From: Vitrella brassicaformis CCMP3155
Lineage: Eukaryota; Protista; Chromerida
DNA: 64,000 nucleotides
Reading direction: 5' to 3'
Assembly: GCA_001179505.1 (NCBI GenBank)
Contig: CDMY01000275.1
Location: forward strand, 494,295 to 558,294
Part shown: positions 5,168 through 32,975 of the stretch, piece by piece
Numbering within the stretch: the stretch's first letter is position 1
How the letters are laid out: each line of letters starts with the position of its first letter
Notes under the pieces: generated by a model
Told to the model about the DNA's origin: nothing
What the model saw: the letters and a program-made list of their open reading frames with translations, nothing else
Database searches by the model: none
Position numbers and translations under genes: made by a program

Positions 5168-5201
<34 letters not shown>

Positions 5202-11520: not shown

Positions 11521-11546
11521 CTCCCTTGTCAGGGTAATAAATATCA

Positions 11547-14339
11547 TCAGGATCTTCCTAAGTTACAATCGGGCGACTCCCAGGTGTTGTCTTCCCCGTC
11601 TAAATCACTGCACGGATTGAGACACGTGTTGAGCTCAATAACGTCAAGAAGTGGCATGTCATTCCGAGGGTGCGTGTCCTCGTAAGAGAGGCCATAGCTG
11701 TAGGGGAATCGCGGCAGCTGCCCGTCGCCCTTGCGGATGTTGAACTGGCATGGGTGATCGGGCCATTTCATTGATAACCGGCCGGTGAAATTCACCGCAC
11801 CGAAGGGGAGGTCGGTCAGCCCGGGGCCCGCCTGTTTGCATGGCAGCCAGGCCGCGACGAAGGCGTCTGAGAGATTTATTTCTTCGTTGACGTACAGCGG
11901 CCTGCCTGAGTACAAAATGGTAATTATTGGGGTCGTGGGTGCGCTGTCGCGTGCATGCTTCAGGCGGATCAAGTCCTCTGGGTACGTATGCCTGCCGGAT
12001 CTGGACCTGTGCCACATGCAACCAGAGTACGACTCATCAACAGCTACACGGCGAAGAATGTGTGCGTACTGGTTTCGATGGTGCATGAGGCTTTCTCCAT
12101 CATCCAGGTCGCCATAGACCTCGGCGTAGGGGTCTTCGGCAATGACATGTATAATGACGTCGTAGTCGCTGTTCAGCATGCCTTTGCCTTCCTCGTCGTC
12201 AACCACCGTGTAGTTATTTCTGTTGCTGTGCTCCTGGAGGGCCTTTATCAGAGAGACGGCATTGTCCACCGTATCGAAAACGTCGTCGTTGACTGGAGGG
12301 GGGAATGACAGCAAGCAGAGAGAAACATGATCCAGGACACACTCGTTGCTCATGCGTTTTGAGCTAACCCTGTCCCTGCCACCCCATGGTCCACCCCCCA
12401 CACGCGAGATGGATCCATCGCGCCTTGCCCATCACCAACACCCTCATGCCGGCCCGTGGCTTCAGCGGCAACACACCGCCGTTGTTCTGCTCAAATACCA
12501 CGTACCGAAACACTTTAGACTTGCTCTCTGATCTTTCTCCTCTCACCTTAGCAGCACCGCCGACTTTTGTACGGTTTCCCTGGCGACGGCCGTGTGCTCT
12601 GGGCTGCCGATGGCGGTTATGTTGACGTCGTCTATTCTGTCCAGTACGTTGACGCCAGGTCCGATCATGCCTAGCCGGGCCTTAAGACGCAACACACGTC
12701 TGGCGGCGTCGTCGATGCGCGACTGCGGTACGGTGCCATTTCTGACAGTCTGGAGAGTGTTCTGGATAAACTTGGAGTAGTGATCGCCACCCACCGTGGA
12801 GAGGAGGAACATGTCAATCTGATAAGGTGTCAAGTGAGGGAGTGACAATGAGTGCGTGTGTGAGACAGGAGGATGCGTGTTGTACGCCCGCGTTGATGCC
12901 TTGTGGGCAGCTGTCGGATGTGCACGAAGGTATGTCAGCGTGGGCGTTCCAGTCGCTCATGACAACCCCATCGAAGCTGAAGTGGCCCTTGAGGATCTCC
13001 GTCAGGTAGTGGTAGTGCTGGTGCATCTCTATGCCGTTGATCTCGTTGAATGAGGGCATCGTGCTCATCACCTCTATCAGGCAGGGAGGCAGGCACAGAT
13101 GCTTTGGCCAAACAGTACTTGTGTACACCCTCGCTTTGAAGCACCCTATGNNNNNNNNNNNNNNNNNNNNNNNNNNNNNNNNNNNNNNNNNNNNNNNNNN
13201 NNNNNNNNNNNNNNNNNNNNNNNNNNNNNNNNNNNNNNNNNNNNNNNNNNNNNNNNNNNNNNNNNNNNNNNNNNNNNNNNNNNNNNNNNNNNNNNNNNNN
13301 NNNNNNNNNNNNNNNNNNNNNNNNNNNNNNNNNNNNNNNNNNNNNNNNNNNNNNNNNNNNNNNNNNNNNNNNNNNNNNNNNNNNNNNNNNNNNNNNNNNN
13401 NNNNNNNNNNNNNNNNNNNNNNNNNNNNNNNNNNNNNNNNNNNNNNNNNNCTTTGCCACAGGGCCTCTCACTTTGGGCGGCTCGGGCCACAGGGCACACT
13501 ACCTACATCCACACAATCGATGCACAAATGTATCAGCATGTATGCACTGACCTTGGCCCACACAGCTGGTGTGGGGTGACGCCAGTGGTCTTTTTCTCTT
13601 CGGTAGCATGCAGAGTGCATAGCTGCGTGCTGTAGTCGTAGCTGAAGACGATGCAGGCCTCATATTGCTGACAGAGGGCCTGGCACCTAAATGGTGTCGC
13701 AACAGATCCCAGACTGATAACATCGACAGGCGTGGCATAGTAGTGGCAGCCCCGAGCGATACTGCCATCCACAAAACATAGCATAATCACACTGTTATCT
13801 TTCGAAATGTTCCTGATGTCACATACCAGCCCCCGGTCAGCTCCTCTCTCCCGCCTTCTGTGCTTCGCTGTCCGTCCGAGGTGCAATATTTGGGCCCTGA
13901 TGTAGCGAAATTGCTCTCTTGCTTATCATGCTGAACGTCGGTCAGCTTGTCGGTGAGGAGGACGCATCCCTGGCCGTACGAGAAGGTGAACGCCTCACAT
14001 TCTTCCCAAGCCCAGCACTTCATCTGACAGTGACGGGGGGTTGGCGATGCCCATCATGGCGTCAGTGGAGATATTGACTTCGGGTGATACATAAAACACC
14101 CCTTGTTCGTAACAACCGGCTGAACAAAGAGTAAAACAAGTCGGTTGAGTTGTCCTTTCTCGGTTGCCTCGCTTACATCCTTCATCGTCGACATAGTCAG
14201 GGATGACAGGGCTGCGGGTCACTTGCGTCTCCGACCGATCAACACACAGACAGAAAAGAAGGGCTGCAGGCAATTGCAGCCGACGGTTGGACGTCCAAGT
14301 TCTACCACGGTTGGACGTCCAAGTTCTACGCATATACAT
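11547..14339 (-). CDS. Secreted GH3 beta-glucosidase/exo-beta-glucanase with N-terminal Apple/PAN domains; one frameshift; part of the GH3 N-domain lies in the gap
   Basis: GH3 motifs: TMPSFNEING, FDGVVMSDW (nucleophile Asp), SRIDDAARRVLRLK, ARETVQKSAVLL, AEDPYAE (acid/base Glu), ILYSGRPL, DAFVAAWLP, FTGRLSMKWP, FPYSYGLSY. Two Apple-like repeats: CQMKCWAWEECEAFTFSYGQGCVLL...SGPKYC and CQALCQQYEACIVFSYDYSTQLCTL...LCGPRS. Hydrophobic N-terminus AALLFCLCV. The G6 run at 14035-14040 shifts the frame. Confidence 0.85.
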
Positions 14340-14479
14340 GTGCAAGTACGGTTTGCCGTACAATAGTGTACACTACATCAGGTCTTCTTTTGTCTATGTA
14401 TACATTCCTTGTCGCAACAGGCCGCGTTCCAGCCAACGTGGCCCGGCATGCACAGCAGTCGCGCCTATTGTGTACATGT

Positions 14480-14745
14480 TCAAACATTAATTGCGCAACG
14501 GCTGCGGAATTGTAACGTCTGTAACGTGACAGATGCCGTGCGTTTGCCATGGGGGTTGAACTTGTGCAAGGGCGATAACGACGCCAAGGCCGTGAAGCCG
14601 AATGAAGCTCTCGTGGCCCTTCTGCGTTCACGTGCTCATTCGGCTGCGACAGCTGCTCGATCAAGTCGAGGAGAAAGCCATCGACCTGTCATCCACATGT
14701 TGCTTGGCGCTGACCATTAACAATGCTCTCAAACTTGAAACCCAC
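14480..14745 (+). pseudogene. Frameshifted remnant homologous to the ORF at 35156-35581
   Basis: Shares KPNEALVALL..LIRLRQLLDQVEEKAIDLSSTCC with the 35 kb ORF at nucleotide and peptide level, but has indels. Confidence 0.75.
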
Positions 14746-16121
14746 TCTTGCTGTCCCCTTCCCCTCTCGGGCAAATGAAACATCATGCTGTTTTAACCGT
14801 AACACTCGTGTATGCGTCCGTGACACTCATACAAATACAGTCCCATGAGCACGCAGAGTCAAACGCTCAAGGGGAGGAGGGATCGATGAGACATGTATTA
14901 GCGACCCACCATCGGGCCGTGTCGTGGCTAGTCGTGGCCCGATGGTGGGTCTTCTTGTCGTGTGCAGTCAGGCGTGAGTGTGTTCCACGGTGCGCGGCAA
15001 GAGTGAGGCCGCCCAGAGGCCGCCACACCGTTCATTCCCCCCTTCCCCAGAGACGAGGTCTGGGGGAGGGGCCCGTATTCACCCCACTAGGTCTTTTCCT
15101 CGCCACACTGTGCCTTCCATGTGCCTGTATGTGTGTGTGTGTGTGTGTGTGNNNNNNNNNNNNNNNNNNNNNNNNNNNNNNNNNNNNNNNNNNNNNNNNN
15201 NNNNNNNNNNNNNNNNNNNNNNNNNNNNNNNNNNNNNNNNNNNNNNNNNNNNNNNNNNNNNNNNNNNNNNNNNNNNNNNNNNNNNNNNNNNNNNNNNNNN
15301 NNNNNNNNNNNNNNNNNNNNNNNNNNNNNNNNNNNNNNNNNNNNNNNNNNNNNNNNNNNNNNNNNNNNNNNNNNNNNNNNNNNNNNNNNNNNNNNNNNNN
15401 NNNNNNNNNNNNNNNNNNNNNNNNNNNNNNNNNNNNNNNNNNNNNNNNNNNGCCTTCCATGTGCCTGTATGTGGGTGTGTGTGTGTGTGCGAGGGCGTAT
15501 GTGTGTAGGGGTGTGAGTGGGTATGGGTGTGGGTATGCGGGTGAGGTATTGGTATTCTTGGGTGTGTGTGTATGTGTGTGGGGGTGTACGTGTGTGTGTA
15601 GGGATGTGAGTGCGGGTATGGGTGTGTCTTGCCGCCCTTTTGCTTTTCCCTCCGGTGATATCTGTATGGGTGTGCCCTGGGAGTGTCTACGGGTCGGCCG
15701 CCTGCCGCCCCTCTCGCCGTAGAGACCGGGGTGGCGGTGTGCTCGACTTTCATACACCCCCAGCACCCCGTGCGTAGTTTTTACAGGGGCGTGTTTGCGT
15801 GTGACTGGTCGATTTGCACTAGCTGCCCACCTGGGGATGGGCGGTACGTACGTATGAAGTCATGGTGCACCACGCGCGCACGCACGCCGCCTTCAGGTTG
15901 CTGGGGTGGCGCGTGTGCGACGTTCTGTGCCTGCTCGTATGTTGCCGTCGTTCGCAGCGCATTGCATATCCTCCTGTTTGCTGCATCTGCCCTCTGCGTG
16001 CTGCGTGTTGCGTGTCCGGGTTGCATGTTAGGGTGCGTGTTTCATGTGGGACGGACCGAGAGGGGACTTGGCCGTCAGGCCGCCTAGGGTGCTCCCTGAA
16101 ATCGCTGCTGCAGCGACGGAC

Positions 16122-16295: not shown

Positions 16296-16334
16296 ACTTC
16301 TAGTCGCCGGCCACCTACGTGGGGGCGTCTCCGA

Positions 16335-16960: not shown

Positions 16961-18958
16961 ATGTTCACTATTCAAAGAAACAACGCTTTCCTTCTTGTCG
17001 CATTGCCCCTGTCTTTATTCGGAATACAATGCCTCATCGCTGGACAGGTGTAATATTATATATGTTATTCGCAATTGAACTGTGTGTGAGTGTGTCCTCA
17101 GGGTGCTACGACATTTGAAGACGTAGTGAGTGTTGATGAGGGCTTCTACATGAATGACTGGAAGTGCTTCTGTCCTGGCCTTGGCGGCTCCTGCTATGGC
17201 GAGTGCGGCCGAGGGTACGACGCTGCTGAGCTAACCAGCAAGGACACGTTCAGGTACGGGCGTTTCGAGACGAGTTTGCACCGGGATGATGTCGAGGGAA
17301 CAGTAGCAACCTTCTTCCTCTTCAAGAATGACAGCGACAAAGTCCGTGGGGCGTTGTGGAAGGAGATAGACTACGAGGTGCATGGCTTGGGCGGCCATGC
17401 CGCGACGCCCATCCAGACCAACATCATAACGGGCAACTTCAAAGACCGCAACAGATCCCCGCAGTACCTCCCAATGCCGGGTCACCCCTCACAGGGTGAG
17501 GCTCAGGCGGATGCTGTCAAGAGAGGTTTCCATCACATTGCGCTTGAGTGGACCCCCGACTATGTCGCATGGTACTTCGATGGAAGACGCGTTCGGCTCG
17601 ATACGGCCTGTGGCGCTGGATTGCATTGCAGTCCCCAAACCTCTGAGTTGACGGACCCGATGAATCTTCGTCTGTCCCTGTGGCCATGCAACCCCCACTT
17701 CGAGTGGGCCGAGTCGTGGGCCGTCAGGTTCGATCCCGCCTCGGTCCCTCTTACCGCGTATTTCGATTATGTCAGGACATACGACTACGACCCGATCACC
17801 AAGGGTGTATCCAATATCGTCTTTCCCCCAGGAATACCGTTTCCTGCCCAATTCGCTTGTATCAGGTTTCATTCCAAAGTGGACAGACGAGTTCGGGACG
17901 CTCAATGCGACTCGATGGGAGGCCAGCACTCACACCTTCGACGCACAATTCAAGCCGAATAATGCTGCCATTGTCAAGGCGGAGGAGACTGACCCGCTGT
18001 CCGACGGGTCGTACCTTTCTTTGTCCATTACAGACAAGAACGCCACAATCGATGTCCTCCCACCCGACTTCCAGAGGCCCACGTACGACGAATTCAACGT
18101 TAAGCCACTAGAATGGGTCTACGATGATTGGAACCCGCCATCCAAAAGCTATTTGCTGGAGAGCGAGGTCTGCAAAGGCGAAGGTGTCACGAGTGAGCCG
18201 GGCAAGCGATACGAGGGAGGCTGGGTAACCTTCACGACTGTATTGGTTGAGGGCCTGCCCAACTTTGGCAATACCCGGATCGATGAGACGGACGCTGTGC
18301 AGAAGTGCACGGCCATGTGTGTAGACCACTACAACAGCAGCGAGTGCCGCTTCTTCACGGTCTTCTCTGTCGAGTCCACCCAGTACTGCAGCGGCTTCAT
18401 GACCCCCGAGAGAGAGAGATCAGCGATAGCTCTGCCGTGGCGGGTTTCATCTGCTCACAGCCTGACTCACAGGCCAAAACAGTTGAGCCCGCAGCCGACG
18501 GTCATATGGAGTTAGAAGCGGAGGCCGAGGCGCCAACCGCTTCTGCTGAAACGGAGACAGAGGCGTCGACCTCTCCTAAACCCCTGGGGGAGCCGGAGGA
18601 GGAAACAGTGGTACCAGACACGCCCGAGGTGATCGATGAGGCCTCCGATGAGTTAATCTGGGCAGTCGAGGGGCAGGATAGCACTAGCCTTGTGCCCGTC
18701 GGCAGCCCGCTTGAGCCATCCGAAGGAGAGGCAGCTTCAGTGATCAAGGTGGAACCAGCTGACATGAGCGAGACAAATGAGGTTTCAACAAAAACAGAAG
18801 GCGACATTCCCATCTGGCTTATTCTCGTTGTCATTGCTGCTGCTCTACTCCCGGTGACGGGCCTGGTCTTCTTCTTCTTCGCTAGAGACAGGAGGTCCAA
18901 AAGCGGGCCCGAAGCAGCGCAGCGCACTCACACCGCGACAAGTTGGGTATCAGTGTGA
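16961..18958 (+). CDS. Circularly permuted GH16 beta-1,3(4)-glucanase (licheninase-like) + Apple-like domain + acidic stalk + TM anchor; (GA)n frameshift
   Basis: Signal peptide MFTIQRNNAFLLVALPLSLFGIQC; AELTSKDTFRYGRFE, WKEIDYE catalytic motif at 17363-17377, QTNIITG, FHHIALEWTPDYVAWYFDG, LRLSLW, FDYVRTYDY, then WTDEFGTLNATRWEASTHTF. Later CTAMCVDHYNSSECRFFTV, an E/T/P-rich stalk and TM IWLILVVIAAALLPVTGLVFFFFA. The frame changes at (GA)6, 18408-18419. Confidence 0.88.
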
Positions 18959-20934
18959 GCGGCTTCCCTTGGCGAACGCATCCGAATGAGCCGATGCGTG
19001 TACGTGTGTATGCTTGCTTTGCGCGACACGCCATCCTTCGTAGGTGTTTTTTGCCTCATGAAGCGAAAGCAACAAAAGCGGCTGGCCGGTCCACCGAGAC
19101 ATGTTTTACCTCGTCCGGTTGTATGTGTGTATGTGTGTGTGTTTTTTTTTCTGTTTCTTAAGACGCACACAGACCTTTTTTTTTAAGACGCACACAGACA
19201 CCCGTGGACAACACTACACATACGCAAACAGCAAGACCGCCTCACGTCCAGTGCAAGCGTGCGTGTCCAACCGATCATGTGTGTGTCGAGTGAAGATGTT
19301 TCGATCCTTGTCGAGGCAAGAGGATGGATGGTACGGCTCATCCACAGCTAGCTATGGGCTTGAAGGGGTGACGGTTTTTATCCCAAGACGCAAGGGTTCA
19401 AAGGGCCTAACCACACATCATAGACACACGGCGAAGGCCGACAGGCTTCATCACAGACAAATCCTCAGTGCAAATCTGAACAGCTTCACAGGGAAGGGGA
19501 GTTTAATCCAATGCAGTCAGTGCGACATTTCGCCGGCCCCTAAAAGAGTGGCGCATACACAGGCACTGCACCGTCACAAACGCATGCTGGCATCAACATT
19601 ACAGACACGGAGACATTTCCCACACACAACAGACACACAGATACACCAAGTCAGACCTGCCTGCGCGCCACCCGCCCTGTACCTCGCTGTGCGCACCTGC
19701 AATAAACAATGACCACGGACACAAACCTCTCAGCACAGTGACCTGTTATGCCTTTCGGACGAAGCGTATGTGTGCCCTTCCGCTGCACATGAAGGACCTA
19801 CACTCATCTCAACGTCCACAATACACATCAGCAGCCACACGGACAGACAGACAAGCAGTCAACCACGCTCACAGATGGCAACATACATACGAAAAGACAG
19901 TGGGCTTCACAAAGAGACGGCCCCTCTTCTCGTGCGTCCTGGCTGCGTCCACCTGTCTGTCTGTCTGTCCGTCAACCACAGTGTGTGCAGAATGGGTCAG
20001 GTCGGCGTATAATGGATGACGTCACAAAGCGCAATCGTGTTGACGATGCCCTGAGCCGGCTCACCGATCAGAATAATCGGAGTAGCTGGAAGGGATGTCA
20101 TTGATCATTAGTTGTGCACACAAAAGAGACAGACCAGACGCCGATTCGGTGTTCATTTTTTGCTATGTCCCGATAATATGAGGGCGGCATCCGTCACGAG
20201 TCAGCTAGTTCCCGTGTGTGCACCAGTCCCCCCACCTCCCGGCCGTCCCATCTCTCCTTCGTCAGTACGTCACGTGGTCGCCTTAATGTCCATGCAAAGA
20301 CGGCCTTTGTGAGGCACGCCGGACACTTCAGTTCCGCATCGCGTCTGACGTACATCGGCATCGCCTTGTCCCCGGGAAAAAGAGGAAAAGCAACCCGGCC
20401 GACGGCGAGAACAGGAGAGCGAGCAAATTGAAATAGATGAAGAGGATTGAAATATCAGCTTGATGTCCAGACACGCATCAAAACGCCACATGAGTAACCG
20501 ACACCGGTTTTCGCCATTTTTTCGCCAACGAGAGGGCCGATTCAAATGGGGAGCGAACTCGTTTCTCGCAGGGTACCCCGCTGCCGGGCTGTGAGATGGC
20601 GGCTGGACCTGAGTTCTGAATGTGTGTGTCATGTTGCATGTCTCACGCTTCTTTGCAGTGTGCGACATGTTTTCACAGTCGACGAACGTTGTCCATTGTT
20701 TCTGCATGTATTGTCTCCCTTCGCTTGCTTGATACGAACTGATGCTTAGACGAACTTCGTCGCCCGTTTCATGCATCTACTTAAAAGCACAATGCACATA
20801 TATTTAAATCAGATCTAAGAGAGACCGCCTGGGAAAAAAGTTGGAGGACACTTTCACCCTTTAGACTAACTGTCTCTGTAGCCGTTGCTTTCAGGGTACC
20901 CGTTTCAGCTCAATGGATCAAAGCTGAGAGCAGA

Positions 20935-23900
20935 ATGGTTCTCAACGTTAATGTCATCCTCGGAGTCCTGATTGGCGCGACGTCTTCGCTTGCAGGTGCT
21001 CTCTCACGTTCACCCCACGTCTCGGACCCTGTCGAAGGTTGGTCCCGCTCTGCTCGCAGTTCCCTGCTGCCTCTATGTGTTCCTGATGCCCGTGGCAATG
21101 AAGACAAATGGGTGGCAGTGTGTGCGGAAGAAGACGGCCGAATACTCTACTTTGCATCCATGGAGGAGGGTCTTCTTCACCCTGTACTTGAAGTGGACCG
21201 CCGGTTTGCTGTTGACTACGATGGCGACGGAGAAGAGGAGATAGCCATAGACGTGAGGGTCTTTGCAAAACACGTGCTTAAGTTCCTTCCGTTTCCATTC
21301 CACAGGGTTCAGGCTCCCACACTCATGAGGCAGGCAAGTCACTCAGCAGCTATTCATTCAAAGTCGACGGCAAGACGGTTTCTGCGACAGTGAGTGAACA
21401 TGCTATAAGAGCAGTCAGAACGACCGCATTGAAGAGCTATACTGACTGCAGGAATGTAGTACTGATGAGAGCAACTGTGAACGGCACATTCGACCATCCC
21501 TTGGTTATGGCAACCATTCCATTGAGATCACTGTGAGAGATGAACACAACAACACCGCGTCCGCCAGCAAGGAGGTCCACGTAGCCCCCATTGATGAAGT
21601 GCCCGGTTGTTCGTTGGCGCTCTACACGGGCGATGATAACAAGGGCTTCTCAGCACGTGGCTTGCTGCGAAGCCGCGCTGCCACAAAGGGTTTCCAGCTG
21701 CGACGCAATGGCGTCAAGGGTCTGCATCCGCGGTGGGTGACGTCCAGCGGCGTGGTGGCTGACGCTGACGAAGACACCCGCGGCCGGGGCTCCCCATACG
21801 AGACCTGTGAAGTACTTCCGGACCCCCAAACGATGGGAATTTTTGATAAAGAGTTCACTAGCAATCTGATCGTCAGGGCACAGGTAGTGCAGTTCACGCT
21901 CCGTGAAAGCACACCACTATCTTGATGTACCCTGACGCAACCAGGGCGTGCTCGAGCTTTCCGCATCTGGTTCAAAGAATGAGCCTACTATGCTGTCTGT
22001 TGAGGGTGGAAGCGACGCAGTGGTGTGGATTGATGGGGAGCAGCGCCTATTCGAGAAGGGAAGGAGCATCCCACTGGAGGCTGGACGCGGAGCGGTGGAG
22101 GTGGAAGTGAGATGGCTTGTTGCGGAGCCGACAAGACAGCCTTTGCGGGTGGTACTGCAAGACGACAACCGATCATCACCAGTCAGCTGGCGCTGGACTC
22201 ACAACCAGCGAGATTGGGAACCCTTCATCAACAAAGTATCGCCCGATAAAGTGGACTCGGATGGGGGCACCCTAATCACGATTGACGGCGTTGGCTTTTT
22301 GAGTCCACAGGTGAGGCAATGAATCACATCCTGCTCATTGATTCACATGAGGCACCGCTGATCTTTTCTCCAATGCAAGACGGCGCAACGGATCAATTTG
22401 GTGTTTATAAGGAACAACATTCGCTATGGCGACCGCGTGGACAGCAGTGGCAATGTACCTGGTGTTGTGGGCTGGAGTGGCATACGCATAGAGTACCGAA
22501 CACCACCCGTAAGTCCGCATTAGACCCATTTTTGATGATCGTCTGATGACCTGCAAACCATTCAGGCTCCTGTGAACCAAATCGCGGATGTGCAGCTTGT
22601 GCTGGTGAGAAGGATGTGTACTCGAAGGGTGACATGGTTGTGCTCCATGTGCTCCTCCAGTTCCCACCTCAGCCATCTGCGCCTTGGGACTCAAAACCCT
22701 CAAATGCCAAGAGAATCGTGTACAAGAGTGGCGGCAGCTTTGACAGGATTGCGTTTCAGGGGCTCAAGAAAGTCGTGGACCTGTGGAGCCAGATCACGGG
22801 CGGTCACCGGGGGAGAGAAGGTCCAAGGTCGTTTTCAGGGACCTTCACAACAGGGGTGTGGGCTCAGGATGGGCGAACACTTGTGATGGGGACAATTCCA
22901 GGCCTCCTGGCTACTGCATCATTCATGAGCACTGATGAGGTGGATAAGAGCTCCATCAAAGTGTATGACACACTACAGAAGGAGTTTCCGGGCCACTCGA
23001 TCTCTGGGATCGAGTTCGATCCGCTCCGCCCCCCCTCAGACCCTCATCTGTATGTCGCACATGGACCCTTCTTCTACTGGGTAATCATCGAATCAATCAG
23101 GAAAGATCGCAACTTAGAATGCCTCTCTCATGCAGTGGAGACAAGGCATTTATTGCTTCAATGAGACCATGACTTACGCCCCCTTCTTGGCGCGCATATC
23201 CCGTCTGTCTGGCCCCGACTTCTCGGTCCTTGAAACCGTACTGGAGAACCTCCCAATTTCAAACACTCAGCACACAGTCAACGGCTTACATTTCGACAAC
23301 GAAGGAAACCTGTACGCCAATGTGGGCAGCACGACGAACGCGGGCTGGCCGGCGTGTTGGTATGTGGCCAAGCACTTCAGTGTGCGTGTGGCCAAGCACT
23401 TCAGTGTATACACTTTCTTCTTGCAATTCAGGACAGGCGGTCTGCCTGAATCCCCTCTGTCGGCATCACTCATTAAGGCATGCAGTTGGATGCTCTGCAT
23501 GTGACCTCACTGTCGCCGTCATGCAGGTCGAGGTCAACAACCCCAACCTGACCAAGAAGATCGAGTATGTCGACCACAAGACGCGCGAGCCCATCGAGAA
23601 GCCAAACCAGGTGAGATTGGGACACTGTCCTGATAAATGGTCCTTAATGTGTTTCTATGCAGCTGGAGGGTGACCGCTATGACCTCGCAAATAGTGTTGT
23701 AGGAGTGACGGTGTGGTCCAGTGGACTCCGCAATGCATACGATAGCGTCTACACTACCAAAGGTACATTAATGCATATGACCTTATTCGAATTGAATGCA
23801 CACTTGCTACGTCTTCACAAGCAGACATTCTCCTTGTGAATGTCGAGCAGGGAGGACCTATGTGATCATGAACGGGCCGAACATTCGCAGTGGTTCCCCT

Positions 23901-24909
23901 GTCGTGGGCCCTCCATCTGGCGACCGCTGTACTCCTGCAGACTTCGATACATGGGACAAGACATTTGAAGACGGTGTACCTAATCCCCTTTTCCTTCCAA
24001 AGCCGGAGAAGGAAAATGGGAGGAATTGTCAGCCGATCCTGTCCAATCAGGGGGTGGAGACCATGGATCGCATTTTCAACTCCTTCAACGGTGCATACCA
24101 CGGCCATCCTAACCCTGCTCGAGCCCGCAATACCAACGACACGAGACAATGGTGGGATATGTATGCATCGCCGTCATCACAGCAAACAAACAGTGCTTAC
24201 TGTGATCCCTGCGTATGGCAAGGTACCACTTCAAGGGCTCACAAGGAATGGCAAAATTGAACTTCACTGCTGGACGACCGCTTCCATCTCCCACCACGGG
24301 AATATCTGAGTTTCGCGGCAGCTGCTTCAACAAACAGCTTCAGGGGAGCCTGTTGGTGTCAAGGTGGCAGAAGGAGATCTTTCTTGTCCCAGATGAGGAA
24401 AACATAGAGGCCCGTACAGAGTAAGATGGCTTTACATTTTCTTCTCTGTTTAAGTATCTTGTTTCAGGTCTTTGGGACTTTTTCGGGACCACCTGGACAT
24501 ACAGTATGGGCCGGCATGCTCTATCGTTCTCATGGGATACGAGAGCGGCTCCCTAAGCGTTTTGATACCCGAGGAAAGCTCGCTGGATGCCTTTGAGAAG
24601 GAGGCGACTTCTCCTCGAGTGTTTGATGTTCTTCCATGGAGAGGCCCGATGTCGTCGGAACTTCCGATTACGCTCGGAGGACGCAGATTTACGAAGGGCA
24701 AAAAGGAAAGACGGCCTGAAACGGTACTGTTCGGAGGCATTGAGGCTGCCATCCAAAGATATGACTCGACACGCATCGAGGTGGTAATTCCGGCAGAAGC
24801 GAAGCGAGCAGATGATCAAAGTCTTAAGAACCTTGTAGACGTTGTTGTCCACTTCTCAGACGGTACATCAGACACTCTTGCAAACGCGTTTTTGTTTTTG
24901 AAGAGTTAG
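20935..24909 (+). CDS. Secreted multidomain protein: PKD-like, PA14-like, IPT/TIG, glucose/sorbosone dehydrogenase-like beta-propeller, IPT/TIG (paralogue 1)
   Basis: Signal peptide MVLNVNVILGVLIGATSSLA; VDYDGDGEEEIAIDGSGSHTHE (PKD-like start); PFINKVSPDKVDSDGGTLITIDGVGF (IPT/TIG); NLPISNTQHTVNGLHFDNEGNLYANVGSTTN, GLRNAYD, YHGHPNPAR (propeller); VLPWRGP...ITLGGRRF (second TIG). About 11 GT-AG introns; no frameshift seen. Confidence 0.8.
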
Positions 24910-25999: not shown

Positions 26000-28900
26000 A
26001 TGAGGTGTGTCGTGCCGCAGCTCCTCTTCATCGTATGGGTGTGTACCGCCCAGGAGCCAGGTCAGTGAGACAGAAGCAAGGAACAGCGGGCCTGGTCGAA
26101 AGCCTTGTTTTGCTCCTTCGTAGGATGCCTCCTCGAGGAGAACGTAGATTACGCAGCGGGTGCAGACATCGAGGCGGCTAGTAGTGGATTCCCTTCTCAT
26201 CTGCGCTGTGCCGACTGGTGCGCAGTCACGGAACGCTGCGAATACTGGGTTCACGTGGGTTTCGGAGACGACGGGATGTGCTTTCTCAAGACTGCCCGAG
26301 AGCCAGTGATGCCCAGGGCAGCAAACCCTGACGAAGGCTTACAGGTGACGGCTGGCAACAAAGCATGCGGAGATCCTTCCAGCATGGTCGCGAAAGGTTC
26401 GTATGCTTGCACAAGATTGGGGGGCTGCCTTGTGATTGGTCGCTCGTAACCACTGCAAATGCTTTTTGTTTGATTCTCTGCAGGTTGTATTTTGGAGGAA
26501 AACGTTGACCGTGCCACAGATTCGGATACGGACCTTAGGGCGGCAATTAGTGGCTTTCCTGAATATCTCAGTTGCGCCGACTGGTGCGCTGGCACAGAGG
26601 GCTGCGAATACTGGGTTCACTTGGGTACTGGAGACGATGGTTCGTGCTGGCTCAAGACAGCCAGAGACCCTGCTGTTCATCCTGCGCCGGATGAGGACGG
26701 CAGGAAGTTCACGGCTGGCAGCAAAGCATGCGGAGACCCGGAAAATATGTTGAGAATAAATGGTCAAGGTATGCCTAACAGGTCAGAGAAAGCGTGTGAT
26801 TGGTATGTCTTAATCGCTACAGATGACAGCTCCGGCTCGGATGAAAGTGCTGGGTGTTTCTCTTCGAAGACAGCATCCAATGCGCCAGTAGTTTACCATC
26901 GGCAGTGGGTGATAGGCAACGACGTACATCTGTATTGGATCTTCGCTTTTGTTTTTAGTTGTGACGCGGTTCAAAAGGGATATCAAACTGCAAATTGGTG
27001 CCAGGTCCAGTGTATGGGCAATCCCGACTGCAACGCTTTTGTCTACCAGCTAAAGAAGGGGCACTACAAACATACCGGTAGGTTCACGCCGCATACGGGA
27101 CAGCCACCTGAAAACGTACCTCGTCCCCTGTGCAGACCCTAACAGCGTGAACCAGGTCGACTGCTTCCTTCTTGCCGACAAGGGCGACACATTCACTCCG
27201 GGGAAGAAGGAAAGGAACAAGGACCTGGAGTTCACATTCGGCCCCAAATACTGTCCGGGAGAGGGTAAGCATCTAGGGCCTGACAATCGCCAATTAGACC
27301 GTGGATGGAAAACTATTTCTGGGTCGTCTCGTCCATCAGAGCCCCCTTGGGACAAGCCTATTGAAGAGTGGCCTCTGCGGATCAATGCCGGCGGCCCGCC
27401 CCACGAAGATGTGTACGACAAGGAAGTGGCGACAGGACAAATACTTCACGGAGCAAGCCGGCCCTACGGGTCTCTATTATGAAAAGAAATTCGTAAGCCG
27501 TCACATAAGCGCGCTTCAGAAACGAGCGCTTTGTACCGTTCGTTTCTGAATCAGACGAAGTCTCGTCCTATGGAGCCCCTCGCCCACACGGGTCGTGAGG
27601 ATTTTGTCTACTCGATACCAGTGGAGTCCCCCGTCGCCGTCGTCGTCAATCTCTACTTCGCTGAGGTAAACAGACGTGTCCTCGCTAATCAAAGCATCGT
27701 TGGTGACAAGGATATGTACGATAGGTCATCCACAAAGGGAAACCGGGACAGCGTGTCCAAAACGTCTTCGTAGAGAACAACCAAGTGCTCAGTGATTTTG
27801 ACATCTTCGCCACAGCTGCGGCTCTCATCGCCCCCGAAGGCACCAAGGTATAAAAGACCGGATTGACCCAGAACACCTATCTGCAACCTTCAATTGTCTT
27901 TTCGCCTGCCATTCCTTCTGAAAGGAGGTCAGGTATATATCAAAGGACACGAGAACGCAGGATGTCGTTGGCAACTCCACCGTGACTGTCTACAACGGCC
28001 CAGACGAGCCCTTCGGCACCATCGTCAAAGTCGAGACGCCCATGGCGGTAATCGAGGACAACAGCATTGACATCAGAGGCGATGCGGTGAAGGGCAAGTC
28101 ATGGCTCACAGCCGTCGAGGTCTACGCCACAGAAGTGGTGCTGGATATCACCGTCACGGCTGATAGCCCCACACAGACGGAACCGTTCACCGCAATTGCA
28201 TTCGCACCGGGAACGCCCACACAGGTGTGTCAAATCGAAAGAGTCCCAGCACTCCACTCAACAACCCTCCTGCCTCTCTGGCTCACGGTGTGTTCTTGCC
28301 TGTCAGACGCTCACGATTGAGAACAGGGACAGCCGCGACGTGAAGCTTCCCATATCATTCGAGGGTGGCAGCGATGCCCAATTTACTTTTGTGCCCACGG
28401 AGGTCATACTCAAGGCGGGAGAGACTTCCACCGTCCACATCACGTGGACTGGAGCCGATACTGCGGATGGCCCTGTCGTCACCTCGCTCAAGCTATCCAA
28501 ACACGTAACAGAGAAGGGATATCCAGCGAGTGTGCCGACGTGTTCCTCTCTCTGTCGCAGCTTCGTGTGTTAATTTCAGCCGATGTAATCAGTAAGGAGG
28601 CCATGCTCGACGTGCAGAGCGGCATACAGATGGGTCTCATCACTCCTCTGAGCTATGGGGGCAGCGGCAAGGGCATCCAGGCGCCCCTGTCGTCAAAGAG
28701 AACAGTCACCATCACACGGGTAGTGGCGTTCGGCTCGGAGGATGCTATCCAGGTGTCCATTCCTGGCACATTTACCGTGGAGGGCCCAGCGGACATCACC
28801 TTTAAGGAGCCGCGGACATCACCTTTAAGGAGCCGCTAAAGGTCACGTCCAAGGCGGCCATCCCCATGCGTATCGGATTCGCTGCCGACAATGCTGGGGA

Positions 28901-31900
28901 CTTCGAGCTCATTGTGGCCTTCATGGGCCCTGACTTCGAGACCAGGTTCATGGCAGTGACGGGTCGCGGTGTCAACAAGGGGGAGCCCCACTATCTGCAT
29001 CCAGTGCTGGACCTGCCGCCTGGCGGCTACGTGGTGGACTACGATGGCGACGGGAAAGAGAGTCTCCTGCTCATGGGGCACTTCAGCCACACACACGAGC
29101 CAAAAATGGTTAGCCGTGAGAAAAGGATGCGCAGGTATGCACAAGTGAATTGATGGGTTTATCTGCCTGTGTCTCTAAACAAGAGTGTAGAGAAGTGGAC
29201 GTACAGCGTGAACGGTCAAGTTGTGTCCAGCGGTGTCGACAAGGACATTACTGAGGAATATGATACTGGTGTTTACACAGTCCAGCTCACCATTGAAGAC
29301 GGAGAGGCAAAAACACTCGCGGACACAGGGAGGTATGCAGCCACACGCAACGAATGCAACACCCATCCGTGCTTGCCTACTTCTGGCATGCCATTTTTTG
29401 TCTTTCTTCCCTCCTCTATCCTCCTTTCAGTGTGGCTGTTGTGCCCATCGACAAGATCCCCGGTTGTGCGGCTTTTCTTTATAAGCCCCCTTCGTCGCAG
29501 CTCAGCGGGTTCTTTGAGGCGCCCATGGACGGCTTCAATCTCAAGATTGGCGGCACGACACTTGAGCCGAAATGGATCGGCAGCAGTCTCGACAACGGAT
29601 GCGAATTCAAACCCGACGGTCGGACTAATAACATCATGGGGTCACCCTTCAAGCAGGATGTCATTCTCAGAGCTAAGGTCGGCGCCGGAGCTTCGCATGC
29701 CATGAGGGGAGTGAATGAGCTTGTATGTATGTCTTGTATCCGTTGGATGGTGAAGGGTACCCTAAAGGTGAATGACGGCATGAAGAATAACAAAGGGGAG
29801 GTTCCGATCACCGTCAACGCAGAGCCGGCCGTCCAGACGATGCTGTGGGTCGACGGCAAGCCTTTTGCACTCGGTAAGGGCAATGCCGAAGCCGAACTTG
29901 CCAACGGGGCCCATCAATTTGAGATCAGCTGGCTCATTAAGGACCCGGCTTCGAAGCCTCTGTCGGTAGGTGCTGTTGTGTAAGTAAGACAAGAGGAGGG
30001 GATGGGGAGTGAACACGCGCGAATCCGTACTTCGCTCAGTTGCATACGAATGGCGAGGCGGCGGCTATCGATGAGATCTCCCACAGCCAGCAGGAATACA
30101 CTCCGTTCATCAACCGCATCTCCCCCACTAAAGGGCACGTCTCCGGCGGCCAAAAGATAACTATCGAGGGTGCCGGCTTCATGAATCCCGATGCGGTCAA
30201 GAGGGGTGCCTCCCTTCTCTTTGGCAAAACACCTGTCGACTACCTCACGGACACTCGGGTCCTCAAAGCTTCTGGCACAGAGATCGTATACGAGATTCCG
30301 CCAGGGGTGAGCGTGCAAAGACTGGCTTAGACCTGTGCGTCGTCTTTACGTGTTCGTTGGATAACAGGAGGAGGGCGAGCTTTCTGTGTCCGTCAAGACC
30401 CCTCATGGTGTATCGAACAAGAAGCGTTTCGGGTATTCTAGTCGTGTGCCCCCCGCTCTTAAGTGGACCAATCAGACCATCTTACTTACCTTGGATAGTG
30501 AAGCACCCCTGAAACGCAAGCGGGGTCGCAAATTCAACGGTACACTTTCTAGAAGACATGCCGAAATTACATTGTATGCCTCTCTCTCTATCTGCGTGTG
30601 TTGTCAGGCTCGCTGACCCAGGGCGAGTGGGGCCCTGATTGTCGCCTATACATGAGTGATATCGGCGGCGGCATCCGGGCGCTTGAGCGGACCTCGAACG
30701 ACGACATCGACGAGGAAAACCTGATCGAAATCACCACCACCATGGTCCGTGAGTGGAAAAATGCCTTTGAACAGCTGTCAACCAACTGTGGCATGCTTCA
30801 GGAAAAATACCCTGGCCACGCCATCACTGGCTTCGGATGTCAGGCTAACCCAAGGGCTAACATATGAAACCATGTTGCGTTCTCCTGTCCCCTGCCTATC
30901 TCAGTTGACCCCTTTGGCGACCCTGACGATCCAGAGATCTACGTGGCACACGCTCCCATGTTCCAGTGGGTACGACACGAGAGAGGGACCCGGCCAGGTG
31001 CACACGTGGATTTTCCTCTTTCTAGCAGGGAGGAGACTGCTTCAGCCAAGAAAACGACACCGCCGAGTTCCTCGGTGTGTTGAGTAAACTGAAGGGTCAG
31101 TGTAGGCACACATGCAGACACGGATGCACAGATCACTGCTGGTGGCGATGGTGCACCAGGTCCCCCTGACTTCAAGCATCATGAAGTGGTGCTGGACGGC
31201 CTGCCCATGTCCAACCACGACCACGGCCTGAACGGCATATCATTCGACAACAGCGGCAACCTTTACTTTCCCATCGGTGCCATGACCAATATAGTACGGA
31301 CACGCGCTACACTCACATCGCTGGCCATGCCTTTCGGATTGTCATCCGTCATGTTCATCCGTGCTCCTCCAGGGCTGGCCCGCATGCATCCTTGGCGGTT
31401 TGCCAGAGAGCCACTACTCAGCTGCCATCATCAAGGTGGAGTTGAGGAATCCAAAGCGCTCCAAAACGCTGGAATGGGTCGACTACTTCACAAGAGAGCT
31501 CATCGGGAACCCCAACCAAGTCAGTGGAATCCGACAAATTCGCGTGGCAATCCAGTTCGTATTGTGACATTTTTGCAGTTGGTTGCAGATACGTACGATG
31601 TGGCCCCGTGGGTCACGGGCGTGTATCCCCACTCATTTGGGTTCCGTAACGCCTACGACACGGTCTATACGACAAAAGGGCAGCTGTGGGCATCTTCAAA
31701 TGGCTGGAACGAGGGCTACGGCCTGGCAATAAACGGACCACCGGAGTCGGGCTGTACGTTCGACGGCTGGGATAAGTCGAGCTTCGCGAGTCCGGACAGA
31801 GGCGAGGCTTTGGACGGGGCGACCGGGGCGGAAAGATTTCATGTCAATGGGGTGGCATTCACGTGTCATCAGGCATAAATCCGTTTTGGAAGGGGGAGAA

Positions 31901-32975
31901 GAAGTGCCGGCCAGTGTTGGAAGAAGACTGGACTGACCCCGATCGCATCTTCCAGACCTTTTCCAATGCCTACCACGGTCTTCCAAACGCCGCACGTGCC
32001 CGCAACATGAAGGACGACCGGCAGTGGTACGTCAAGGACGCCGACGCCCCACATGACCCACCGAGGTTCCACCAGGGGTATCCATGGGAGTCATCCACTA
32101 ACGGAATCGCCGAGTTCAGGGGTACAAAGCAGATCGGCACTGCATTATCCCCTGCATCCAATCCTTCCAGGCAATTGCTTTGCCGGAGCCATGCGTGGCG
32201 ACTTGCTGGGCGCCAAGTGGAGCGGCTGGATCTGGCGGGTTGACATTCCCTACCTGGACGAGGAGGAAGGAGACGACGTTACGATTTCAAAACTCGAGGG
32301 AGCTGAAGTTGGCGGACTGGAGGTACGCACGATGCAAAGGGAGACACACGGACACGATACGCATGGTTTGCAGGTGGTGTACGGCCCAGGGTGCAGTATC
32401 TTGACGTTGGATTACACGCACAACAATCTCAAGCACATCATGGCCGACGACGAGGACGCCAACTCTAACTCCGGACCTACGGCATTCGGTGAATGAAGAT
32501 GCCATTTAAATGGCTTGCTCCGACGCTCATGCATGTCCGTACGCTTGTCGCTCGGTCGCTTAGACATCACACCCTGGAGGGGCAACTACCGATTCGCACA
32601 AAAGATCGTCATCGGTAAGTGAGAATGCACGCACTGCCTTCATGTTACGGATGGCATCTGCGTATGCAGGTGGCTACAATTTGAACGGCCAAGGCGAGAC
32701 GAAGCCTCCGATGCACCGTAAGGCCAACAAATTGGTCATCGATGGGGTCGAGTGTAGCATCACCTCTCAAAGCGTAAGCACAATAGAGACTTACTCACGT
32801 CGTGACTTGGTGCCTGTCTGCGTAGGACACACGTATCGAGGGTGTGGTTCCCGCTGTGGAGAGCCCTGCTCACGTTGAGGAGCTCGTGGATGTGGTCTTG
32901 CACTTCAATGATGGCACAGAGTCGGTACTGCTGGACTCGTGGCTCTGGGCTGACCCAGGCGATGCAATCAACTAG
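26000..32975 (+). CDS. Large secreted protein: 3 Apple/PAN + malectin + Ig-like + PKD-like + IPT/TIG + sugar-dehydrogenase-like propeller + IPT/TIG (paralogue 2); two frameshifts
   Basis: Signal peptide MRCVVPQLLFIVWVCTA; Apple repeats CADWCAVTERCEYW...CFLKT...AGNKAC, CADWCAGTEGCEYW...CWLKT...AGSKAC, CQVQCMGNPDCNAF...CFLL...FGPKYC; malectin RINAGGP..WRQDKYF..VVVNLYFAE..VLSDFDIF; VVDYDGDGKESLLL; PFINRISPTKGHVSGGQKITIEGAGF; GLPMSNHDHGLNGISFDNSGNLYFPIG, GFRNAYDTVYTTKG. Frameshifts near 27420 and at the 23-bp duplication 28789-28836. Stop TAG 32973-32975. Confidence 0.8.

What the first reader, a model, noticed from the sequence alone, without database searches (positions are those of the whole stretch)
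11547..32975. PUL-like eukaryotic beta-glucan processing cluster armed with Apple adhesion domains
Seen: four neighbouring secreted carbohydrate-active genes within 21.5 kb (exo-acting GH3, endo-acting GH16, two sugar-dehydrogenase-propeller proteins, one with malectin) and no housekeeping gene between them; three of the four carry Apple/PAN modules. Established: GH16 licheninases cut beta-1,3/1,4-glucans to oligomers that GH3 exo-enzymes convert to glucose, and Apple domains are the glycan-binding adhesin modules of apicomplexan MIC4-type proteins. Inference: this is a co-regulated surface foraging or wall-remodelling module in which bacterial-type enzymes were fused to host adhesin domains, analogous to a bacterial polysaccharide utilization locus and potentially informative about the pre-parasitic role of Apple domains.
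Basis: partly seen in the sequence, partly recalled or inferred. Interest (0 to 1): 0.85.

Follow-up and report, generated by a model that had tools for sequence, protein, structure and literature searches.

The report
Vitrella glycan-enzyme gene neighbourhood with Apple domains
Four neighbouring genes of the alga Vitrella brassicaformis do encode secreted beta-glucan-type enzymes and sugar-binding proteins carrying Apple/PAN modules, but such fusions are common and scattered in this genome, and nothing shows the four work as one regulated unit.

Summary
The window is the last 64 kb of Vitrella brassicaformis CCMP3155 scaffold CDMY01000275.1 (100% identity). Between 11.5 and 33 kb lie four intron-rich genes and nothing else.

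- G1: an ExoP-type GH3 with two PAN domains.
- G2: a lichenase-type GH16 with a signal peptide, a possible PAN-like module and a membrane anchor.
- G3 and G4: two tandem paralogues with TIG domains and a glucose/sorbosone-dehydrogenase-like propeller. G4 also has three PAN domains and a malectin domain.

The PUL-like reading is not supported.
- Each family is expanded and dispersed in Vitrella: at least 10 GH3 genes (at least 6 with Apple), at least 6 GH16, and at least 4 propeller genes.
- PAN is also fused to GH13 and GH97 genes elsewhere.
- The paralogous loci examined lack this linkage.
- No transporter or regulator lies in the cluster.
- Co-expression could not be tested.

The closest non-Vitrella relatives of all three enzyme types are bacterial. 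In the bacterial GH3 relatives, CBMs are the accessory modules, so PAN probably acts as a carbohydrate-binding module.

Three of the four genes carry a single frameshift in the assembly relative to paralogues. The public annotation splits G4 into three models.

Verdict: real, modestly interesting, and a variant of known enzyme plus binding-module fusions.

The parts
11547..14339 (-). G1. The architecture is a signal-like N-terminus, two PAN/Apple domains, an ExoP/ExoI-type GH3 (N and C domains) and a Cys-rich C-terminal motif. About 790 bp of the GH3 N domain is hidden by the N run at 13151-13450.
   Evidence: Pfam GH3_N, GH3_C and PAN_1 x2. PDB 3usz at E 1e-62. The full architecture is read from the 93%-identical paralogue L012/P0210.
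13883..14189 (-). G1 PAN-a (six Cys, from DDEGC to SGPKYC). A 1-nt frameshift sits at about 14041-14042 relative to paralogue L012.
   Evidence: DNA alignment with L012: GCCAACCCCCC in the window against GCCACCCCCC. Second PAN_1 stretch.
13548..13778 (-). G1 PAN-b.
   Evidence: PAN_1 at E 1.8e-9, best stretch at residues 91-140 of the test sequence.
12940..12966 (-). G1 motif VVMSDWNAH, holding the GH3 nucleophile Asp. The acid/base motif EDPYAEVYGD is at 12108-12137.
   Evidence: Alignment to ExoP 3usz. Coordinates. The residue roles come from established knowledge of barley ExoI.
16961..18958 (+). G2. The architecture is a signal peptide (16961-17047), a lichenase-type GH16, a beta-sandwich extension, a Cys-rich PAN-like module, an acidic linker, a transmembrane helix (18806-18880) and a short tail.
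   Evidence: Pfam PF00722. PDB 3axd/1mve. Start as in the public model. The tail is read in the +1 frame after the (GA)6 tract.
17357..17386 (+). G2 catalytic motif WKEIDYEVHG (E-x-D-x-E).
   Evidence: Aligned to EVDIEVLG of the Fibrobacter beta-glucanase. Coordinates.
18162..18466 (+). G2 Cys-rich module, possibly of PAN fold. It is interrupted by a frameshift in the (GA)6 tract at 18408-18419.
   Evidence: Six conserved Cys shared with paralogues P0057 and P0004. The conserved AGFIC motif lies in the +1 frame. Foldseek top hit is LAPP 1i8n at E 0.14. Pfam finds nothing.
20935..24909 (+). G3. The architecture is a signal-like N-terminus if translation starts at 20935 (the public model starts at 21160), Ig/PKD-like and beta-sandwich regions, a TIG domain (from 22218), a GSDH-like propeller (about 22985-24420) and a C-terminal TIG (about 24620-24906).
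   Evidence: TIG x2. Paralogy with G4. A GT-AG intron joins 24420 to 24468, so the gene runs beyond the public stop at 24424.
23262..23294 (+). G3 motif NTQHTVNGLHF. Its His aligns with the catalytic His144 of sGDH. The RN motif SSGLRNAYDS is at 23717-23746.
   Evidence: Profile alignment to 1c9u. Invariant columns in A1.
26000..32975 (+). G4, one gene of about 1750 aa. The architecture is a signal peptide, three PAN domains, malectin, ASH-type Ig, beta-sandwich regions, TIG, a GSDH-like propeller and a second TIG. The public annotation splits it into three models: 26000-27482, 27570-28839 and 28866-32975.
   Evidence: Paralogue P0048 joins the malectin and TIG parts in one model.
26123..27263 (+). 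G4 PAN modules 1 (26123-26371), 2 (26483-26734) and 3 (about 26960-27263).
   Evidence: PAN_4 in three stretches at 49.4 bits, and a weak PAN_1 hit on the third. Coordinates.
27369..28134 (+). G4 malectin domain, spread over four exons. A 1-nt frameshift lies at 27420-27426 (AAGGAAG against AAGAAA in the paralogue).
   Evidence: DNA alignment with L001. The joined sequence matches PF11721 positions 3-116 at 55.8 bits, against positions 59-116 for the public start.
30808..32488 (+). G4 GSDH-like propeller. Motifs are MSNHDHGLNG at 31207-31236, FGFRNAYDT at 31636-31662 and AYHGLPNAARARN at 31968-32006.
   Evidence: The homologues' PF07995 hits lie on the aligned stretch.

Best explanation
This is a real neighbourhood of four extracellular glycan-active genes in the nuclear genome of Vitrella brassicaformis. 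Each belongs to a lineage-expanded, dispersed family of bacterial-type proteins. In Vitrella these have gained introns, signal peptides and PAN/Apple modules, which are the accessory modules where the bacterial GH3 relatives carry CBMs.

Likely mechanism (inferred):
- The membrane-anchored lichenase-type GH16 (G2) cuts beta-1,3-1,4 or beta-1,3 glucans near the cell surface.
- The secreted ExoP-type GH3 (G1) trims the oligomers to glucose.
- The two tandem paralogues G3 and G4 bind glycans through malectin, PAN and TIG modules. They may oxidise released aldoses with a PQQ-type propeller.
- PAN acts as a carbohydrate-binding module.

The most likely substrate is external polysaccharide, that is, osmotrophic foraging.

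The adjacency comes partly from tandem duplication. There is no evidence that it is a regulated unit like a bacterial PUL.
For: Shown.
- The window is Vitrella nuclear DNA. It has GT-AG introns and eukaryotic flanks: a DnaJ gene and a copia retroelement.
- Enzyme identities and catalytic motifs are as stated.
- PAN and malectin score above Pfam cut-offs in G1 and G4.
- G3 and G4 are paralogues.
- The propeller is homologous to bacterial proteins with PF07995. His and Arg-Asn are conserved, and sGDH-type structures come first in Foldseek.
- Families are expanded and dispersed. GH3 has G1, P0210, P0213, P0062, P0065, P0219, P0076, P0105, P0222 and P0083. GH16 has P0001, P0002, P0057, P0004 and P0005. 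Other propeller copies lie in L007 and in L009+L001.
- Among the 50 best GH3 relatives, 30 have the ExoP C domain. Relatives without PAN carry CBM6, CBM35, CBM3 or F5/8-C, and all PAN-bearing ones are Vitrella.
- PAN is also fused to GH13 and GH97.
- Codon-position divergence between G4 and its copy is 7.9/5.3/15.0%, which shows purifying selection.
- Paralogous loci lack the linkage.
Against: - No activity, localisation or expression data exist for these four genes.
- G1, G2 and G4 each carry one frameshift in the assembly.
- No transcript of the window copies of G2 or G4 was found in the JGI collection, so some copies may be inactive.
- The propeller assignment rests on weak direct scores: E 0.26 for the profile and pLDDT 54 for the model.
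- Eukaryotes are not known to make PQQ (my own knowledge).
- Restricted to these three families and placed at random, such a triple would be very unlikely. My rough estimate is about 1e-4, so some functional or historical linkage is not excluded.
Confidence: 0.6

Rival explanations
1. The four genes form a co-regulated beta-glucan utilisation module, a eukaryotic analogue of a PUL, kept together by selection.
For: - Endo GH16 and exo GH3 of matching specificity sit head to head about 2.6 kb apart.
- No unrelated gene lies in 21.5 kb.
- Two other loci pair members of these families with PAN-bearing hydrolases: L006 has GH16 next to GH13-PAN, and L007 has a propeller gene next to GH97-PAN.
- Random placement of only these three families makes the triple improbable.
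Against: - There is no transporter, sensor or regulator in the interval.
- The linkage is absent at L012, L013, L015, L002, L010 and L009.
- G3 and G4 are duplicates.
- The partner enzymes at the other mini-clusters act on alpha-glucans, not beta-glucans.
- There are no expression data.
- With a few hundred carbohydrate-active or PAN genes in 72.7 Mb, about one such triple is expected by chance (my estimate).
Confidence: 0.15
2. The cluster copies are decaying. G1, G2 and G4 would be recent pseudogenes, with their function carried by the intact, expressed paralogues elsewhere.
For: - There is one frameshift in each of G1, G2 and G4 relative to paralogues.
- The assembly is Illumina-based and ICORN-corrected (PMC4501334).
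- Transcripts in the databases match the other G4 copy (P0053/P0055).
- Exact searches for window-specific G2 and G4 sequence in the JGI collection found nothing.
Against: - Each gene has only one lesion, and each sits in a homopolymer or dinucleotide tract.
- The downstream frames stay open for hundreds of codons, with conserved motifs.
- The codon-position pattern shows purifying selection.
- The region has paralogues at 83-93% identity and many N runs. Short-read assembly or gap-filling errors are therefore plausible.
- The MMETSP transcript P0060 is 95% identical to G1.
Confidence: 0.15
3. The same enzymes act on the alga's own wall, for example in sporangium opening or wall remodelling, rather than on external polysaccharide.
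For: G2 is tethered to the membrane by a long acidic linker. Wall-acting GH16 enzymes of fungi and plants are tethered in a similar way (my own knowledge). Crf1 and XTH appear among weaker PDB hits.
Against: - The closest characterised relatives are hydrolytic bacterial lichenases and marine ExoP, not transglycosylases.
- The wider PAN-tagged set includes GH13 and GH97, which suggests a general digestive toolkit.
- I found no data on Vitrella wall composition.
Confidence: 0.25
4. Artefact: bacterial contamination or a misassembly creating a false neighbourhood.
For: The enzymes are of bacterial type, and there are six 300-N runs in the left 15.5 kb.
Against: - All four genes have multiple GT-AG introns.
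- Dispersed Vitrella repeats lie between them.
- The stretch 16000-37482 is gap-free and holds G2-G4.
- The flanks are eukaryotic.
- Only the G1-G2 junction crosses an N run, at 15152-15451.
Confidence: 0.03

Closest known systems
Bacterial polysaccharide utilization loci (Bacteroidota PULs)
   Same: Adjacent genes for endo- and exo-acting glycoside hydrolases and glycan-binding proteins exposed at the cell surface.
   Different: There is no SusC/SusD-type transporter pair and no dedicated sensor or regulator. The genes are monocistronic eukaryotic genes with introns, and G1 is on the opposite strand. Linkage is not conserved among paralogous loci. Co-regulation is untested.
Fibrobacter succinogenes 1,3-1,4-beta-glucanase (GH16 lichenase; PDB 1mve, 3axd)
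   Same: Best solved relative of G2 (E 6e-28). The E-x-D-x-E motif is conserved, and the same C-terminal strand region aligns.
   Different: G2 adds a eukaryotic signal peptide, an intron, a Cys-rich PAN-like module, an acidic linker and a membrane anchor. Identity is only about 35%.
Pseudoalteromonas ExoP and barley ExoI (GH3 exo-1,3/1,4-beta-glucanases; PDB 3usz, 1ex1)
   Same: Best solved relatives of G1 (E 1e-62 and 4e-31). The SDW nucleophile and PYAE acid/base motifs are conserved.
   Different: G1 lacks the ExoP C-terminal domain, which 30 of its 50 nearest relatives have. It carries two N-terminal PAN domains and a Cys-rich C-terminal motif instead.
Oomycete CBEL-type proteins (CBM1 + PAN/Apple)
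   Same: A SAR-lineage precedent for PAN/Apple teamed with carbohydrate-binding functions in secreted proteins. CBEL binds galactose and GalNAc motifs (PMC3532174).
   Different: CBEL proteins are non-catalytic. Here PAN is fused directly to GH3, to the malectin-propeller protein, possibly to GH16, and to GH13 and GH97 elsewhere.
Toxoplasma MIC4 (six Apple domains; galactose-binding adhesin)
   Same: Apple/PAN modules with lectin activity in a relative of Vitrella (PMC6608980 and PMC6829480).
   Different: MIC4 is a non-enzymatic microneme adhesin. No orthology is shown. The PAN modules of G1, G2 and G4 are only about 25% identical to one another.
PQQ-dependent soluble glucose/aldose dehydrogenases (sGDH 1c9u, 2ism, 3das; fungal AA12 pyranose dehydrogenase 6jt5)
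   Same: Six-bladed propeller. His144 and Arg228-Asn229 equivalents are conserved in G3 and G4. These are the top structural and profile hits.
   Different: There is no significant direct sequence hit. The propeller is embedded between TIG domains in a protein of 1000-1750 aa. Cofactor binding and activity are unknown.

Membership tests
GH16 (lichenase-type) | Match to the GH16 family profile above the curated cut-off | tested here: met
   PF00722 at 61.6-61.9 bits against a cut-off of 22. PDB lichenases at E 6e-28.
GH16 (lichenase-type) | Catalytic E-x-D-x-E motif | tested here: met
   EIDYE at 17363-17377, aligned to EVDIE of 3axd.
GH16 (lichenase-type) | Hydrolysis of beta-1,3-1,4-glucan | not testable with these tools
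   Needs an enzyme assay.
GH3 (ExoP/ExoI-type exo-beta-glucanase) | GH3 N- and C-terminal domains | tested here: met
   PF00933 at 45.4 bits and PF01915 at 57.9 bits. Most of the N domain lies under the N run, but it is complete in paralogue P0210.
GH3 (ExoP/ExoI-type exo-beta-glucanase) | Nucleophile Asp (SDW) and acid/base Glu (PYxE) | tested here: met
   VVMSDWNAH and EDPYAEVYGD, aligned to 3usz.
PAN/Apple domain | Pfam PAN_1 or PAN_4 above the gathering score in G1 | tested here: met
   PAN_1 at 37.7 bits against 21.4, in two stretches.
PAN/Apple domain | Pfam PAN_1 or PAN_4 above the gathering score in G4 | tested here: met
   PAN_4 at 49.4 bits against 27, in three stretches.
PAN/Apple domain | PAN profile or fold match for the G2 C-terminal module | tested here: inconclusive
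   No Pfam hit. hhalign probability 17%, on the CxxxC...C core only. AF2 model at pLDDT 66. Foldseek top hit is LAPP 1i8n at E 0.14, followed by AMA1 and the HGF N domain.
Malectin | PF11721 above the cut-off | tested here: met
   55.8 bits over profile positions 3-116 for the joined sequence, and 43.3 bits for the public start, against a cut-off of 23.
Glucose/sorbosone dehydrogenase (PF07995, PQQ-type propeller) | Direct profile match | tested here: not met
   No PF07995 hit for G3 or G4. No PDB hit by sequence.
Glucose/sorbosone dehydrogenase (PF07995, PQQ-type propeller) | Homology through intermediates, and conserved catalytic His and Arg-Asn | tested here: met
   P0049 and P0051 carry PF07995 at 34-49 bits on the stretch that aligns to G3 and G4. 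R252 and N253 are invariant in the family alignment A1, and the family's second His in the LPvSNHDH motif aligns to sGDH catalytic His144.
Glucose/sorbosone dehydrogenase (PF07995, PQQ-type propeller) | Six-bladed propeller fold resembling sGDH | tested here: inconclusive
   Model at pLDDT 54 and pTM 0.63. Foldseek top hits are 1c9u, 2ism, 7cdy, 3das and 6jt5 at E 8e-6 to 1e-3.
Glucose/sorbosone dehydrogenase (PF07995, PQQ-type propeller) | PQQ binding and sugar oxidation | not testable with these tools
   Needs reconstitution with PQQ/Ca2+ and a dye-linked assay.
Polysaccharide utilization locus | SusC/SusD-like transporter pair or other dedicated uptake system in the locus | tested here: not met
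   All genes in 11.5-33 kb are accounted for, and none is a transporter.
Polysaccharide utilization locus | Dedicated sensor or regulator, and substrate-induced co-expression | not tested
   No regulator domain was found in the interval. No expression data were accessible.
Eukaryotic functional gene cluster | Linkage conserved in relatives or paralogous loci | tested here: not met
   Paralogous loci L002, L009, L010, L012, L013 and L015 lack it. Orthologous loci in Chromera are not testable here.

The most novel reading that the evidence does not exclude
Vitrella uses PAN/Apple as its general carbohydrate-binding module on a horizontally acquired, expanded set of secreted glycan-degrading enzymes. 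On this reading the ancestral job of the Apple domains later used by apicomplexan adhesins was to target glycans for extracellular digestion. This particular neighbourhood would then be a co-regulated beta-glucan utilisation unit that includes an oxidative, PQQ-type (AA12-like) step.
Probability: 0.12. Interest if true: 0.7.

Novelty: new variant of a known kind. Interest (0 to 1): 0.38.

Why it matters
Glycoside hydrolases with appended binding modules are ordinary. Here the appended module is the Apple/PAN domain that apicomplexan parasites use in host-glycan adhesins such as MIC4. It occurs on many bacterial-type enzymes of a free-living relative.

That gives a concrete and testable idea for what Apple domains did before parasitism: targeting glycans. 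It also gives a set of candidate proteins for binding and activity assays.

The work corrects the public gene models. G4 is one gene of about 1750 aa and not three. G3 and G2 are longer than annotated.

The cluster itself adds little unless co-expression or conserved synteny is shown.

Tried and rejected
I built a small dynamic-programming exon finder instead. It merged neighbouring genes through spurious mini-exons, so gene ends were fixed by hand, using paralogues and the public calls.
- A single-sequence PDB search of the propeller found nothing. The profile search was not significant.
- hhalign of the G2 module against PAN modules was inconclusive.
- The PAN query found only two proteins in the big protein database, so it gave no genome-wide PAN count.
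- The supplements of the genome paper hold no Pfam counts for PAN, GH16 or GH3.
- The Templeton and Pain 2016 review is not held.
- A literature search on the Vitrella wall was unproductive.
- Two exact-match scans for window-specific G4 and G2 sequence in JGI contigs found nothing.
- P0060 could not be located on a contig.
- Rejected: bacterial contamination (introns, Vitrella repeats, eukaryotic flanks).
- Rejected: the idea that the window is Chromera or another species (100% identity to CDMY01000275.1).

Full report
**Origin of the window.** A locus fetched through a Vitrella Apple-domain protein is L008, which is GCA_001179505.1, CDMY01000275.1:510294-531776. It is 100.000% identical to window 16000-37482. 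The window is therefore the last 64 kb of that scaffold of Vitrella brassicaformis CCMP3155. According to the genome paper, the genome is 72.7 Mb with 22,817 genes and is a short-read Velvet/SSPACE/GapFiller/ICORN assembly (PMC4501334). The window holds six runs of exactly 300 N, all left of 15.5 kb.

**Gene content of 11.5-33 kb.** The region is intron-rich, so no long bacterial-style ORFs are present. I combined three things:
- stop-to-stop ORFs;
- a small exon finder with GT-AG splice scoring;
- paralogous proteins and loci.

The public calls for the stretch, converted to window coordinates, are:
- GH16, 459 aa, at 16961-18515;
- an 840-aa protein without a Pfam hit, at 21160-24424;
- a PAN_4 protein of 363 aa (P0056), at 26000-27482;
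- a malectin protein of 331 aa, at 27570-28839;
- a TIG protein of 972 aa, at 28866-32975.

No other gene lies between them. The flanks hold a DnaJ gene on the left and a Ty1/copia retroelement on the right.

**G1 (minus strand, 11547-14339).** Pfam finds the GH3 N and C domains and PAN_1. The best solved relatives are the Pseudoalteromonas exo-1,3/1,4-beta-glucanase ExoP (E 1e-62) and barley ExoI. The SDW nucleophile and PYAE acid/base motifs are present. A 93%-identical copy on CDMY01000655.1 (L012, P0210) shows the full architecture:
- a signal-like N-terminus;
- two six-Cys PAN domains;
- GH3;
- a Cys-rich end.

In the window, most of the GH3 N domain lies under the N run at 13151-13450.

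**G2 (plus strand, 16961-18958).** This is a GH16 (PF00722). Its best solved relative is the Fibrobacter succinogenes 1,3-1,4-beta-glucanase (E 6e-28), and the motif EIDYE is conserved. The public start gives a clear signal peptide, MFTIQRNNAFLLVALPLSLFGIQCLIAGQ. After the catalytic domain comes a roughly 100-aa module with six Cys conserved in paralogues P0057 and P0004. The tests on this module gave:
- no Pfam match;
- hhalign against PAN modules at 17% probability;
- an AlphaFold model (pLDDT 66) whose best match is the PAN-fold protein LAPP (E 0.14), followed by AMA1 and the HGF N domain.

I call it PAN-like but unproven. The conserved last motif, AGFIC, then an acidic linker and a transmembrane helix (18806-18880), lie in the +1 frame beyond a (GA)6 tract at 18408-18419.

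**G3 and G4.**
- tblastx shows that G3 is colinear with the C-terminal half of G4.
- G4 begins with the signal peptide of P0056, followed by three PAN_4 stretches.
- The malectin domain starts (WPLRINAGG) in the last exon of the P0056 model and continues in the next public model.
- Aligned with the paralogous contig L001, the window has one extra base at 27420-27426. This shifts the frame.
- The joined sequence matches PF11721 over positions 3-116 (55.8 bits), against positions 59-116 for the public start.
- The second and third public models are joined by an ordinary intron, as in paralogue P0048.

G4 is therefore one gene of about 1750 aa. G3 continues past its public stop through a GT-AG intron to a C-terminal TIG ending at 24909.

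**The propeller.**
- It has no direct Pfam or PDB sequence hit.
- Its homologues P0049 and P0051 carry PF07995 (GSDH) exactly on the aligned stretch.
- P0049 comes from a bacterial contig with Mur ligase and T2SS genes.
- A five-sequence profile picks soluble PQQ glucose dehydrogenase first (E 0.26). The motifs are colinear and include the equivalents of His144 and Arg228-Asn229, which are conserved in the family.
- A low-confidence model (pLDDT 54, pTM 0.63) finds 1c9u, 2ism, 7cdy, 3das and the fungal AA12 enzyme 6jt5.

The label 'sugar-dehydrogenase-like propeller' is therefore reasonable but indirect.

**How common are such genes in Vitrella?** An exhaustive search with the G1 GH3 part, followed by name look-ups, shows at least ten Vitrella paralogues. 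Six are 'Apple domain-containing', and others carry P-type or HYR modules.

Among the 50 nearest representatives:
- 30 have the ExoP C domain;
- relatives without PAN carry CBM6, CBM35, CBM3 or F5/8-C;
- every PAN-bearing one is from Vitrella.

GH16 has at least five further Vitrella paralogues. The propeller family has further copies in L007 and in L009+L001. PAN is also fused to an alpha-amylase next to GH16 P0002 (L006). It is fused to a GH97 next to a propeller-PAN gene as well (L007).

**Linkage.** Six paralogous loci lie among housekeeping genes or transposons, without the partner families: L012, L013, L015, L002, L010 and L009. No Chromera protein appeared among the named hits, but this was not a proper test.

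A rough calculation is my own inference. It assumes uniform placement over 72.7 Mb.
- With 300 carbohydrate-active or PAN genes, about one triple within 21.5 kb is expected.
- With 100 such genes, about 0.04 are expected.
- For the three families alone, about 1e-4 are expected.

So the verdict depends on a genome-wide count that I could not obtain.

**Integrity of the genes.** G1 (about 14041-14042), G2 (18408-18419) and G4 (27420-27426) each have a single frameshift relative to paralogues. Each sits in a short repeat tract, and each is followed by a long open and conserved frame. Divergence between G4 and its copy is 7.9%, 5.3% and 15.0% at codon positions 1, 2 and 3, against 11.6% outside exons. 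That is the pattern of purifying selection. Assembly error in a paralogue-rich, gap-rich region and very recent inactivation both remain possible. Exact searches for window-specific G2 and G4 sequence in JGI contigs found nothing.

**Interpretation.** The enzyme pair fits endo-then-exo breakdown of beta-1,3-1,4 or beta-1,3 glucans. The malectin, PAN and TIG modules fit glycan binding. Two precedents support PAN as a lectin module:
- MIC4 binds galactose (PMC6608980);
- oomycete CBEL teams PAN with CBM1 (PMC3532174).

The bacterial affinity of all three enzyme types supports acquisition from bacteria followed by domain accretion. So do the introns, the signal peptides and the PAN modules.

The PUL analogy fails on its defining features. 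There is no transporter and no regulator, the linkage is not conserved, and co-expression remains untested.

I rate the finding as real and modestly interesting: a variant of the known theme of hydrolases with appended binding modules.

Noticed in passing
window 27420-27426; 18408-18419; 14041-14042: G4, G2 and G1 each carry a single frameshift relative to paralogues. Each lies in a homopolymer or dinucleotide tract and is followed by a long open frame with conserved motifs. The cause is either assembly error or very recent inactivation.
   Followed up: partly
window 26000-32975 and 21160-24909: The public annotation splits G4 into three gene models, with ends at 27482 and 28839. It ends G3 at 24424 and G2 at 18515. 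Domain continuity and paralogues indicate longer single genes.
   Followed up: yes
L012 (CDMY01000655.1); L009 (end of CDMY01000396.1) + L001 (CDMY01000959.1): Second copies of G1 (83-93% nt identity) and of G4 (82-86.5% nt identity, introns included) sit on other, small contigs. The G4 copy is split across a contig end and a 7.9-kb contig. Database transcripts (P0053, P0055) match that copy rather than the window copy.
   Followed up: partly
window 11396-11557 (- strand): Just past the G1 stop codon, the last 115 bp or so of the gene is repeated (82% identity to the L012 3' end). It encodes LLDVVERTTCVNPCSDLLGEDNTWELPDCNLGRL and runs into the N run at 11095-11394.
   Followed up: no
window about 14280-14335 (- strand): An in-frame tandem duplication in the G1 N-terminal region (RTWTSNRG/RTWTSNRR), absent from paralogue L012.
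   Followed up: no
window 20576-20783 and 37770-37940: Short dispersed repeats shared at 81-91% identity with several other Vitrella loci (L002, L003, L007, L010). The first lies in the G2-G3 intergenic space.
   Followed up: no
window about 35950-44400 (- strand): A Ty1/copia-type retroelement (RVT_2 at E 4e-43, and an integrase-like SH3 domain) bounds the neighbourhood on the right.
   Followed up: partly
L007 (CDMY01000608.1): A G3-like propeller gene with a C-terminal PAN module (63% identical to G4 PAN1) sits 0.9 kb from a GH97 gene that also ends in a PAN module. PAN modules therefore occur at either end of these proteins.
   Followed up: partly
window 2976-15451: Six runs of exactly 300 N lie in the left quarter only. 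The one at 13151-13450 corresponds to about 790 bp in paralogue L012. (GT)n/(CA)n-rich sequence flanks the run at 15152-15451.
   Followed up: no
window 45900-64000: The right flank appears, by eye on my rough gene models, to hold ordinary genes. Examples are an Rpn13/ADRM1-like ubiquitin receptor and a PPPDE/DeSI-like peptidase. These were not checked with any tool.
   Followed up: no
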